DNA of 55,445 nt, from contig NC_068985.1 of assembly GCF_001194135.2 (NCBI RefSeq), forward strand, positions 7,613,011-7,668,455. The letters are read 5' to 3'. Of this stretch, positions 53,861-54,620 are shown in pieces. Both the position numbers and the translations under genes were made by a program. Position 1 is the first letter of the stretch. Every line of letters begins with the position of its first letter. The notes beneath the pieces are model-generated. The model saw nothing but the letters and a program-made list of their open reading frames with translations. It was not told where the DNA came from and did not search any database. Source of the stretch: Octopus bimaculoides (taxonomy: Eukaryota).

Positions 53861-54620
53861 TTCTTTTATTAGCCACAAGGGCATAGATGAGGGGGCATCA
53901 CAAGAACAGACAATTTGTGTGAGGATTTACATAAAAGATGGAGAGAAAAAATGGAAAAGACAGTGAAATGCGAAAAAATATAAATAGGGTACAAAGTCTG
54001 TGATAATATAAATGATGCAGCCTCCTGGCATGAGAGAAACTTCAGCTAGAGCCACTCAATGAACCCCACAGATCCAGGATTTCTCCGACCAACAAAGCCC
54101 TCTCTCCTGCTTTCCAATCTTCAGGCGCATACTTAGAGTAGGGTCAATCACTCTAACCATTTCTGCCAGTCACCCATCTTTTCACAAATTCACTGGAAAG
54201 TAGCACTTCGCTTTTCACTCTCACTTTCCTTTCCAATTGGAACTATGCTTGACCGAAGAGGAAGGTGTCTTTCCTCAACTCAATCCTATCAGCACATAAC
54301 CTCTTTCGATAGTAGGATTCATCCACACAAGATAACAGCTGTTCGACAACTCCACAAGTCAGCAATACTCGGACACTGCACAAGTGCATGTAGAACGGTT
54401 TCCTCGCTCTGCGTGCATCTCGAGCAGTCCCGCGTGACAGAGCTCCCGTGCCTGCAAAGTTTATCTCGAATTGGCTGTGCTCCTCGGTAGCACTGCCAAG
54501 CCAGGGATTTCTGTGAGTAATTCATGGTAGTACCAGGGCCGAAAGTACTCCGAAATAGACCCAGTTAGTTCATCCCCGTCGACGCCTGGAGTTTCCCCAA
54601 GAACGTCATCGCTGTTACTC
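53861..54620 (-). pseudogene. Tx1/L1-like LINE 3' end (ORF2 C-terminal zinc knuckle plus 3' UTR)
   Basis: QKSLAWQCYRG...DCSRCTQSEETVLHALVQCPSIADLW (CCHC knuckle) and ERKVRVK..VL..SEFVKRWV. The 3' end reads ...cccttgtggctaataaaagaa. Confidence 0.85.

What the first reader, a model, noticed from the sequence alone, without database searches (positions are those of the whole stretch)
53861..53913. A SINE variant carries the 3' tail of a Tx1/L1-like LINE: candidate SINE-Tx1 partnership
Seen: the Tx1-like LINE ends (sense) ttgtctgttcttgtgatgccccctcatctatgcccttgtggctaataaaagaa. Two SINE-B copies (32388-32444 and 38870-38927) end ttgtctgtccttgtttgtcccctctatgtttagccccttgtgggcaataaagaaataagaa (38870 copy, near-identical in the other). 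The blocks ttgtctgt.cttgt, cccct, ctatg, cccttgtgg and aataaa are collinear. All other SINE-B copies I could read have an unrelated tail (...ggccttgtgcc...tagaaa). Established: SINEs borrow the 3' end of the LINE that mobilises them, and many Tx1-clade elements are target-site specific. Tx1-tailed SINEs are rare as far as I know. Inference: a SINE-B subfamily swapped tails to use a Tx1 machinery, and this changed where it inserts (see the two nested insertions).
Basis: partly seen in the sequence, partly recalled or inferred. Interest (0 to 1): 0.7.

Follow-up and report, generated by a model that had tools for sequence, protein, structure and literature searches.

The report
Octopod SINE shares LINE 3' tail
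Two copies of a short repeat (SINE) in this cephalopod-like window end in the same roughly 55-base tail as a neighbouring L1/Tx1-type LINE, and the same pairing occurs in the argonaut genome, so this LINE group is probably what copies these SINEs.

Summary
The 3' end of a 5'-truncated LINE (minus strand, 54659→53858) and the tails of two SINE-B copies (38870-38927, 32388-32444, minus strand) align over about 55 nt. The Smith-Waterman score is 40, against 15±2.6 for shuffles. The LINE end is the best non-self match of the SINE tail in the whole window.

A profile built only from five LINE 3' ends found elsewhere picks out exactly these three sites in the window. So the tail belongs to the LINE family and is not a SINE piece stuck on one copy. 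The five ends come from Argonauta hians, octopus read assemblies and metagenome contigs.

In a 22-kb Argonauta locus, a 5.8-kb near-intact LINE with 17-bp TSDs sits among at least seven related SINE copies. Three of their tails were scored against the LINE tail and match it over 50-68 nt (scores 57-65).

The LINE has APE, RT and zf-RVT domains, and its ORF1 has a CCHC knuckle. Its closest solved relative is human L1 ORF2p. That makes it L1-superfamily and Tx1-like, but I did not test Tx1 membership by phylogeny.

- that the other SINE-B tail is unrelated;
- that a tail swap went towards Tx1;
- that insertion sites changed.

Verdict: a genuine SINE-LINE pair, a new member of a known kind. It is notable because tail-sharing partners in the L1 group are rare.

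The parts
53858..54659 (-). 5'-truncated, decayed copy (about 800 bp) of an L1/Tx1-type LINE: the C-terminal end of ORF2 with its zinc-binding motif, then a 3' UTR of about 300 nt
   Evidence: zf-RVT PF13966, E=1.6e-9. Frameshifts and stops are visible in the translation. Homology to an octopus transcriptome contig, L006, is 80% and starts exactly at 54659, while L006 continues as LINE ORF upstream. The 3' UTR is collinear with that of L011.
53858..53913 (-). LINE 3' tail, the finding itself. The terminal module gcccttgtggctaataaaagaagtc is preceded by ttgtctgttcttgtgatgccccctcatctat.
53675..53857 (-). (TCA)3(TTA)n microsatellite directly 3' of the LINE end, running into an assembly gap. It is either a LINE-borne 3' repeat or the target microsatellite.
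   Evidence: LINE relatives L011 and L002 are likewise followed by (TTA)n, read as ATC|ATTATTATT. The Argonauta copy is not: its TSD is in unique AT-rich DNA.
54660..54678 (-). 5' flank of the LINE fragment, gATTATTgTTATTATcATT. This TTA-type microsatellite remnant suggests insertion into a TTA-rich tract.
38870..39098 (-). SINE-B copy with the LINE-type tail B (tail 38870-38927), nested inside a SINE-A element
   Evidence: The 9-bp TSD agaagcttg lies at 39099-39107 and 38861-38869.
32388..32616 (-). Second SINE-B copy with tail B (tail 32388-32444), abutting a 5'-truncated SINE-B copy head to tail
   Evidence: It is 84.7% identical to the 38870 copy.
32137..32387 (-). 5'-truncated SINE-B copy with tail A, interrupted by gap 32191-32269, lying immediately 3' of the tail-B copy
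48474..48692 (-). Example of a SINE-B copy with tail A (...ccctcccccaaaatttcggtccttctgcttagagtagaaaaga), with a 13-bp TSD ataaagaggaata
48720..48940 (+). SINE-B copy with tail A and a 16-bp TSD tattctgaca[g/c]tgaaa
12454..12882 (-). Two SINE-B tail-A copies in tandem (12662-12882 and 12454-12645), joined by (TTA)5 and preceded by (TTG/TTA)n

Best explanation
The window holds a SINE-LINE pair with a common 3' tail.

The LINE. An octopod LINE group of the L1 superfamily, Tx1-like, has an ORF1 with a CCHC knuckle and an ORF2 with APE, RT and C-terminal zf-RVT domains. It ends in a conserved 3' module, ...GCC-CTTGT-GGC-yAATAAArGAAATC. This module has no poly(A). In octopus-type copies it is often followed by (TTA)n.

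The SINE. SINE-B is about 230 bp, has a B-box-like motif and occurs at least 14 times in the window. Two of its copies end in about 55-60 nt derived from that LINE 3' UTR.

Inferred mechanism. SINE-B RNA presents the LINE-like 3' end. The LINE's ORF2 protein binds that end in trans, nicks AT-rich DNA and primes reverse transcription on the target. This leaves TSDs of 9-17 bp.

What is shown and what is inferred. Shown here: the tail homology, its terminal position, its conservation across diverged LINE copies and across octopod lineages, and the TSDs. Inferred: recognition of the tail by ORF2p and actual trans-mobilisation.

Tail B is probably not a switch to a new kind of LINE. The same pairing exists in Argonauta hians, so the partnership is old. 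It likely predates or spans the argonaut/octopus split.
For: 1. The tail similarity is well above chance, both pairwise and window-wide.
2. A profile from five LINE tails outside the window recovers only the LINE end and the two SINE-B tails in 55 kb. Each hit is flush with the element's end.
3. The terminal module is present at six LINE 3' ends: the window copy, L011, L002, L004 and two in Argonauta L010. Their ORFs are only about 68-78% identical at nucleotide level.
4. Tail B aligns over about 60 nt with two different LINE subfamilies, the window LINE and L011, each at score 40 with 0 of 2000-5000 shuffles reaching it. Each shares different upstream blocks with tail B.
5. In Argonauta, a 5,765-bp LINE with a 17-bp TSD lies among at least seven SINE copies that share the SINE-B body core. 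Three of their tails were scored against the LINE tail and give 57-65, with 0 of 2000 shuffles reaching that. The LINE-tail profile finds about 10 such tails in the 22 kb.
6. TSDs of 9-16 bp flank SINE-B copies.
7. The closest LINE relative, L006 at 80% identity, comes from an octopus meta-transcriptome (PMC11662614).
8. No poly(A) follows any of these ends.
Against: - Only one LINE copy and two tail-B SINE copies are in the window. No genome-wide consensus could be built.
- All copies here are old and decayed: the two SINEs are 85% identical to each other, and the LINE has stops and frameshifts. Contemporaneous activity is therefore not shown.
- The predicted 3' stem-loop is compatible with the sequences: 84% of cells pair, against 36-59% in slid controls. 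But it shows no significant covariation; 127-133 of 500 shuffles reach the observed values, and RNAalifold keeps only 3 pairs at -1.2 kcal/mol.
- Trans-mobilisation is an inference from the general rule for stringent LINE/SINE pairs.
- Tail-B SINE copies do not carry the (TTA)n that follows three of the LINE ends.
Confidence: 0.75

Rival explanations
1. Chance or low-complexity resemblance between two T/G-rich, A-rich ends.
For: The tails are compositionally simple: TG-rich, then AATAAAGAA. A 23-nt stretch inside SINE-A (about 1757-1779, +) also matches the 5' half of tail B at score 31.
Against: No shuffle reaches the observed score, 0 of 5000 pairwise and 0 of 400 window-wide. The independent LINE-tail profile hits only these sites. 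The same relation is much stronger in Argonauta.
Confidence: 0.02
2. The shared segment is a SINE tail secondarily attached to this one LINE copy, as a chimera or by a SINE insertion at the LINE's end, and is not part of the LINE family.
For: Only one copy of this exact LINE subfamily reaches its 3' end in the data I could obtain. The closest relative, L006, and L012 both stop short of the tail.
Against: - No SINE-B body precedes the tail in the LINE.
- The 3' UTR is collinear with that of L011, with the module at the same position.
- The terminal module is found at six of six LINE ends.
- L011's own tail aligns with tail B over 61 nt.
Confidence: 0.04
3. Both SINE-B tails come from this same LINE group. 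Tail A would be an older or differently sourced version of the same terminal module (GGC-CTTGT-GCC...GTAGAAAGAAT followed by TTA-rich sequence). Tail B would be the ancestral or re-acquired longer version. On this reading there was no change of LINE partner at all.
For: - The tail-A consensus aligns with the L011 LINE tail at score 32 (0 of 3000 shuffles) and with the Argonauta SINE tail at score 25 (3 of 3000).
- Tail A keeps the CTTGT loop with a flipped middle stem pair, GGC..GCC against GCC..GGC.
- Several tail-A ends are followed by (TTA)n, as LINE ends are.
- Argonauta SINEs with the same body core all have B-type tails, and no tail-A signature occurs in that locus.
Against: - The LINE-tail profile does not detect tail A copies or the tail-A consensus.
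- Similarity of tail A to the window LINE is weak, reached by 97 of 3000 shuffles.
- No LINE ending in a tail-A-like sequence was recovered.
Confidence: 0.4
4. One reading: acquiring the Tx1-type tail changed target choice, so that tail-B SINEs insert preferentially into other SINEs, at a specific site in the tRNA-like head.
For: Both tail-B copies abut another SINE at an ...AGAA... motif in the head region: SINE-A gtggtaAGAAgcttgc and SINE-B ctggcAGAAacgttagc. SINE-A and SINE-B together cover only about 10% of the non-gap window. Some Tx1 elements are known to target repeats (PMC4494074).
Against: - The sample is n=2 and was chosen after the fact.
- The second case has no host 5' half upstream and no clear TSD. 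It may be a template-switch dimer or an adjacent insertion.
- The LINE itself and Argonauta SINEs insert in diverse AT-rich sites, with TSDs starting TA(T/A).
- Tail-A copies also form tandem pairs.
Confidence: 0.1

Closest known systems
Stringent-type LINE/SINE pairs with a common 3' tail, for example eel UnaL2/UnaSINE1. The general rule is from Ohshima et al. 1996 and Kajikawa & Okada 2002, as summarised in PMC3472496 and PMC5786205.
   Same: The SINE's last 50-60 nt are homologous to the LINE's 3' UTR end. The similarity is flush with both termini. There is no poly(A). A small hairpin is possible next to the end. TSDs flank the copies.
   Different: The partner here is in the L1 superfamily, whereas most known pairs involve L2, CR1, RTE or similar clades. 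Recognition and mobilisation are untested. The stem-loop is not supported by covariation.
L1-clade LINEs with SINE partners: maize LINE1-1_ZM with ZmSINE2 and ZmSINE3, and Chlamydomonas L1-1_CR with SINEX-3_CR (Ohshima 2012, PMC3472496).
   Same: An L1-group LINE with a conserved specific 3' end that SINEs share. This implies non-relaxed 3' recognition within a clade otherwise known for poly(A)-based relaxed recognition.
   Different: Those pairs are in plants and green algae. [quoted passage not shown] The present case is in cephalopod molluscs. Its ends read ...AATAAAGAAATC, sometimes followed by (TTA)n, rather than poly(A).
SINEU mobilised by Tx1-Mar in crocodilians (Kojima 2015, PMC4494074).
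   Same: It is a proposed partnership between a Tx1-group LINE and a SINE.
   Different: That assignment rests on a shared target preference (Mariner-N4_AMi) and shared snRNA-derived heads, not on a shared 3' tail. Here the evidence is a shared tail, and no strict target preference is seen.
Microsatellite-targeting LINEs: Tx1-clade Kibi at (TC)n and Koshi at (TTC)n (cited in PMC4494074), and R4-clade Dong at (TAA)n (from my own knowledge).
   Same: The window LINE copy, two LINE relatives (L011, L002) and several SINE-B copies lie in or next to (TTA)n tracts.
   Different: The full-length Argonauta copy and most SINE-B copies have TSDs in non-microsatellite sequence. At most this is a preference for TA-rich sites, or (TTA)n is generated at the element's end.

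Membership tests
SINE/LINE pair with a common 3' tail | 3'-terminal sequence similarity between SINE and LINE beyond chance | tested here: met
   for the window; for Argonauta.
SINE/LINE pair with a common 3' tail | The shared segment is the genuine end of the LINE family, present in several independent LINE copies | tested here: met
   The terminal module is at six of six LINE 3' ends. Tail B aligns over about 60 nt with two LINE subfamilies. Other copies of the window's own subfamily could not be obtained.
SINE/LINE pair with a common 3' tail | Conserved 3' stem-loop supported by compensatory changes | tested here: inconclusive
   84% of cells pair, against 36-59% when slid. Covariation is not above shuffles, and RNAalifold gives only a 3-bp hairpin.
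SINE/LINE pair with a common 3' tail | The LINE protein mobilises the SINE in trans | not testable with these tools
   This needs a retrotransposition assay.
Tx1 clade of non-LTR retrotransposons | ORF2 with APE endonuclease, RT and a C-terminal Cys/His motif; ORF1 of the RRM/CCHC (type I-like) kind | tested here: met
   Argonauta relative: PF03372, PF00078 and PF13966 in ORF2, plus a CCHC knuckle in ORF1 that scores below Pfam's cut-off. The window fragment has only zf-RVT. Type I-like ORF1 in animals is described as 'consistent with Tx1' in PMC5203782. These features are shared with other L1-group lineages.
Tx1 clade of non-LTR retrotransposons | The RT domain groups with Tx1 references in a phylogeny | not tested
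   No reference Tx1 sequences were available. Source names for 20 related protein clusters were uninformative. The only anchor is human L1 ORF2p as best solved relative, E=3e-51 against 1e-26 for R2. Literature classifies the L1-group LINEs of molluscs as L1-Tx1 (PMC10294476, PMC13282606).
Tx1 clade of non-LTR retrotransposons | Target-sequence-specific insertion (typical of many members, not all) | tested here: not met
   TSDs of the LINE and SINE copies lie in unrelated sequences. The only common points are a TA-rich start and frequent proximity to (TTA)n.
tRNA-derived SINE (SINE2) | Short, non-coding, multicopy and flanked by TSDs | tested here: met
   At least 14 copies in the window. TSDs are 9-16 bp.
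tRNA-derived SINE (SINE2) | Head recognisably derived from a tRNA, with A and B boxes | tested here: inconclusive
   A B-box-like gagttcaaattcc (gtgttcgaatccc in Argonauta) is visible by eye. ARAGORN and Rfam find no tRNA similarity.
Relaxed, poly(A)-dependent L1 mobilisation (Alu/B1 type) | SINE and LINE end in poly(A) and share no specific tail | tested here: not met
   No poly(A) is present at any of the ends, and a specific shared tail is present.

The most novel reading that the evidence does not exclude
Octopods carry an L1/Tx1-group LINE lineage with stringent 3'-end recognition, based on a CUUGU-loop hairpin plus AAUAAAGAAAUC. This lineage would be the long-sought partner of a large share of the octopod-specific SINE expansion: several SINE families in Argonauta and Octopus share its tail. 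That would make it the first tail-sharing L1-group SINE/LINE system described in animals. It may also prefer TA-rich or (TTA)n sites, which would seed microsatellites and tandem SINE pairs.
Probability: 0.3. Interest if true: 0.65.

Novelty: new member of a known kind. Interest (0 to 1): 0.45.

Why it matters
SINEs make up about 11-12% of octopus genomes and about 40% of their transposable elements. Recent annotations leave nearly all of them 'unclassified' and name no LINE partner (PMC13282606, PMC8967140).

Knowing which LINE copies them links the SINE bursts to the activity of one LINE group, for which 13 L1-Tx1 families are reported as recently active in O. vulgaris. It also gives a handle for dating and classifying SINE subfamilies by tail.

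[quoted passage not shown] This bears on how relaxed template recognition evolved in L1.

Tried and rejected
1. Protein search with the decayed window ORF gave one hit. A two-sequence profile gave nine, all on contigs of about 1-2 kb. Several did not reach the LINE 3' end (L001, L003, L006-L009, L012), and P0012 had no contig on record.
2. I tried to name the clade through source annotations. Twenty clusters from the exhaustive search, which returned 62,561 relatives, carried only 'hypothetical protein', 'reverse transcriptase domain-containing' or 'exonuclease III'. Tx1 versus L1 therefore stays unresolved.
3. ARAGORN and Rfam on the whole window and on SINE copies found no tRNA or other family.
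4. RNAalifold and pair counting on 14 tails gave no significant covariation.
5. The LINE-tail profile against tail A found nothing. The link between tail A and the LINE rests on pairwise scores only.
6. I considered that 'gcaataaagaaat' at about 54640 marked another SINE tail. It lies inside the LINE ORF and is not conserved in L006, so it is chance.
7. I considered (TTA)n as a strict target. The Argonauta TSD and the SINE-B TSDs in unique sequence reject this.
8. I did not use the one-shot scans of metagenome or prokaryote contig collections, because octopod DNA is not expected there.
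Full report
**What is at the coordinates**

The window is AT-rich eukaryotic DNA (GC 37%) with 16 assembly gaps. All elements of the finding lie on the minus strand.

Read 5'→3' on that strand, 53913→53861 is ttgtctgttcttgtgatgccccctcatctatgcccttgtggctaataaaagaa. It is followed by g-tc and then (TCA)3(TTA)n up to a gap.

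Upstream lies a decayed reading frame ending in a C-x2-C-x8-H-x4-C motif. This motif matches Pfam zf-RVT at E=1.6e-9.

Homology to related LINE copies begins exactly at 54659 (80% identity to L006). L006 itself continues upstream as LINE ORF. So the window holds an 800-bp, 5'-truncated LINE copy at 54659→53858. It carries frameshifts and stop codons.

Its flanks are gATTATTgTTATTATcATT on the 5' side and (TCA)3(TTA)n on the 3' side.

**The SINE**

A repeat of about 230 bp, 'SINE-B', occurs at least 14 times in the window. Copies share a head with a B-box-like gagttcaaattcc. They also share a body core...cctttcatcctttcggggtcgataaattaagtaccagt...ggtcgatgtaatcgactt.

After the core come two kinds of tail:
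- Most copies have tail A: cccctcccccaaaatt.ctggccttgtgcctatagtagaaagaat.
- Two copies have tail B: (a/c)ttcctttgtct(g/c)tccttgtttgtcccctctatgtttagcccc(c)ttgtgggcaataaagaaata. These are 38870-39098 and 32388-32616, and they are 84.7% identical to each other.

ARAGORN and Rfam do not recognise a tRNA in the head. The tRNA origin is therefore unproven. TSDs of 9-16 bp flank several copies, as expected for retroposed SINEs.

**Is the resemblance more than chance?**

Yes, on three tests.
- Pairwise local alignment of the LINE tail with the SINE tails scores 40 and 37. Dinucleotide shuffles average 15 (sd 2.6, maximum 30), and 0 of 5000 reach the observed score.
- When tail B is searched against the whole window on both strands with its own copies masked, the best hit is the LINE 3' end (score 40). 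In 400 shuffled tails the window-wide maximum averages 25.4 (sd 2.2) and never exceeds 37. The runner-up, score 31, is a 23-nt stretch inside the other SINE family, SINE-A.
- The independent LINE-tail profile described below recovers the same sites.

**Is the tail part of the LINE family?**

Protein searches with the ORF2 C-terminus recovered related LINE copies from four kinds of source:
- octopus read assemblies; SRR3401912 is an octopus meta-transcriptome according to PMC11662614;
- ENA metagenome contigs;
- JGI metagenome contigs;
- the Argonauta hians genome assembly.

Every copy that reaches its 3' end carries the same terminal module:

| Copy | 3' end and what follows |
|---|---|
| L011 | cgggcccttgtggccaataaaagaaatc, then (ATT)n |
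| L002 | aaacccttgtggtcaataaggaaatc, then (ATT)n |
| L004 | agtccttgtggctaataaaagaagaaatc, then atttct |
| Argonauta (duplicated 3' UTR, internal end) | cagccaggtggctaagaaagaaat |
| Argonauta (true end) | cggcccttgtggctaataaagaaatc |

These LINE copies are only about 68-78% identical to the window copy in the ORF.

A profile HMM was built from these five non-window tails alone and run over the 55-kb window. It returns exactly three hits with E<0.6:
- the LINE end (2e-6);
- SINE-B tail 32420-32389 (2.8e-5);
- SINE-B tail 38892-38871 (3.2e-4).

Tail B also aligns over 61 nt with the L011 tail (score 40, 0 of 2000 shuffles). There it shares blocks (ctgtccttg, tttg, atgttt) that differ from those it shares with the window LINE. 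Tail B therefore derives from a LINE 3' UTR of this group. The idea that a SINE tail was stuck onto one LINE copy is rejected.

**The same partnership in Argonauta**

Locus L010 is from Argonauta hians (assembly GCA_054771915.1). It contains a 5,765-bp LINE at 6886-12650, flanked by a perfect 17-bp TSD, TATTTTTAAAATTTGTA.
- ORF1 is 476 aa and has a CCHC knuckle.
- ORF2 has APE (PF03372), RVT_1 and zf-RVT domains. It is interrupted by one in-frame stop.

In the same 22 kb there are at least seven SINE copies. Their body core is homologous to SINE-B from the B box onward. Their tails read ...gtctttgtctgtccttctgtgttcggcccttgtggctaatagagaaatc.

Three of these tails were scored against the Argonauta LINE tail. 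They match over 50-68 nt with scores of 57-65, and 0 of 2000 shuffles reach that. The LINE-tail profile finds about ten such tails in the locus, including those of a second short element type.

The segment c(t/c)tttgtctgtcctt is common to the Argonauta SINE tail and to the window's tail B. No tail-A signature occurs in the Argonauta locus.

The LINE-tail/SINE relationship is therefore general in octopods.

**Tail A**

The tail-A consensus aligns with the L011 LINE tail as TTTC.GG..CCTTGT.GCC.ATA..AGAAA..ATTATTAT. The score is 32, reached by 0 of 3000 shuffles. It aligns with the Argonauta SINE tail at score 25, reached by 3 of 3000.

Tail A keeps the CTTGT loop between GGC and GCC, where the LINE has GCC and GGC. 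Several tail-A ends are followed by (TTA)n.

However, the LINE-tail profile does not detect tail A, and its match to the window LINE is weak. I regard 'tail A is a diverged module of the same LINE group' as plausible, at about 0.4, and unproven. At the least, 'unrelated' is too strong.

**LINE clade**

The domain architecture places the element in the L1 superfamily. So does the best solved relative, human LINE-1 ORF2p at E=3e-51, compared with 1e-26 for R2 proteins.

An ORF1 with a CCHC knuckle is the type I-like form that Ivancevic et al. call consistent with Tx1 in non-mammalian animals (PMC5203782). Mollusc L1-group elements are classified as L1-Tx1 or Tx1 in recent surveys (PMC10294476, PMC13282606).

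I could not run an RT phylogeny with reference sequences. Source names of 20 related clusters were uninformative. 'Tx1-like' is thus an inference, not a tested membership.

**Insertion behaviour**

The 38870-39098 copy is cleanly nested in a SINE-A head, with the 9-bp TSD agaagcttg.

The 32388-32616 copy abuts a 5'-truncated tail-A SINE-B at ...gaaata|agaaacgtt. The host's 5' part is not found upstream. A possible 7-bp TSD (ttataac) would flank the pair as a unit. That is compatible with a template switch or with an adjacent insertion, and it cannot be decided here.

Other TSDs:
- SINE-B: TATTCTGACA[G/C]TGAAA, ATAAAGAGGAATA and TAAGGCCACAG.
- Argonauta LINE and SINEs: TSDs begin TATT or TATA.

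The machinery therefore uses diverse TA-rich sites, not one specific sequence.

(TTA)n tracts directly follow the window LINE, L011, L002 and some tail-A SINE-B ends. They also flank some copies on both sides. This fits either a preference for TA-rich or (TTA)n targets, or repeat growth at the element's end.

Two nested or adjacent tail-B copies are too few to claim a change of target choice. Still, SINE-A and SINE-B occupy only about 10% of the window, so the idea deserves a genome-wide test.

**Structure**

Single-sequence folds repeatedly give a hairpin, GCC-CUUGU-GGC, extended by pairing of an upstream UUCU.UGU with the terminal A(U/C)A.AGAA.

On a 14-sequence alignment, 84% of cells pair in this structure, against 36-59% when partners are slid. 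Covariation is no better than column shuffles, and RNAalifold retains only three pairs. A recognition stem-loop is plausible but not demonstrated.

**Comparison with what is known**

Sharing of 3' tails between SINEs and their LINE partners is the established rule for 'stringent' LINEs.

Within the L1 clade it is rare. Ohshima (2012) found three SINEs with L1 tails among 58 pairs, and the three named are plant or algal (PMC3472496).

A Tx1-SINE partnership has been proposed for crocodilian SINEU, but from shared target preference rather than a shared tail (PMC4494074).

Recent octopus repeat annotations list L1-Tx1 families and leave nearly all SINEs unclassified. They do not analyse partners.

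I found no description of this pair in the searchable literature. I could not query Repbase, Dfam or SINEBase.

**Verdict**

The secondary inferences do not hold on present evidence: that the other tail is unrelated, the direction of a swap, and altered targeting.

This is a new member of a known kind of system. It is of moderate interest because of the rarity of tail-sharing partners in the L1 group and the weight of SINEs in octopod genomes.

Noticed in passing
window 1757-1779 (+), inside the SINE-A copy at 1600-1950: SINE-A contains tttgtgtgtcagtgtttgtcccc, which matches the 5' half of SINE-B tail B in 21 of 23 positions (score 31, the second-best hit in the window). It may be chance in TG-rich sequence or an older LINE-derived piece inside SINE-A.
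   Followed up: partly
window 12454-12882 (-) and 32137-32616 (-); L010 14827-15323: SINE copies often sit head to tail in pairs. Two tail-A SINE-B copies are joined by (TTA)5. A tail-B copy is fused to a 5'-truncated tail-A copy. Argonauta has a 250-bp x2 tandem SINE pair. This suggests insertion next to existing tails or template switching.
   Followed up: partly
window 48461-48956: Two SINE-B copies in opposite orientation lie head to head. Their 5' TSD copies overlap by 3 nt (48694-48706 and 48704-48719). These are two independent insertions, with nicks a few bases apart on opposite strands at tttat|tct.
   Followed up: partly
window 52200-52597 (-) and 54938-55037 (-): An unidentified repeat of about 400 bp is present. 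Its two copies align only over their first ~100 nt (76% over 130 nt once the flanking (TTA)n is included). It is bounded by (TTA)n-type microsatellites. One copy ends ...ggtgcatcttgtcaatatttggagaa followed by (TTA)20, which loosely resembles the LINE terminal module. The other lies immediately 5' of the LINE fragment.
   Followed up: partly
window 34933-34955 (-): A 23-nt remnant of a tail-A SINE-B end (cattgtacctttagtagaaagga) is followed by (TTA)10 and preceded by a (TTC)n tract. It is an extremely 5'-truncated insertion.
   Followed up: partly
L010 12014-12650: The Argonauta full-length LINE carries two tandem versions of its 3' UTR (ending at about 12289 and 12650) inside a single pair of TSDs. 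The first has a variant loop, gccAGGTggc.
   Followed up: partly
protein P0012; loci L001, L009, L011, L012: Cephalopod-type LINE ORF2 fragments occur in environmental metagenome assemblies. One is annotated in NCBI as a protein of a Herbaspirillum sp. MAG, which is probably eukaryotic DNA mis-binned into a bacterial genome.
   Followed up: no
window 38870-39098 compared with 32388-32616: By eye (not computed), the two tail-B copies differ at about 3 positions in the CpG-free tail of about 65 nt but at about 20% of positions in the CpG-rich head and body. This fits CpG decay rather than selection on the tail.
   Followed up: no
window, 16 runs of N (for example 52818-53674, 32191-32269): Gaps make up 13% of the window, and many border microsatellites or SINE copies. 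The downstream TSD of the LINE copy and part of one SINE-B copy are lost in gaps.
   Followed up: no
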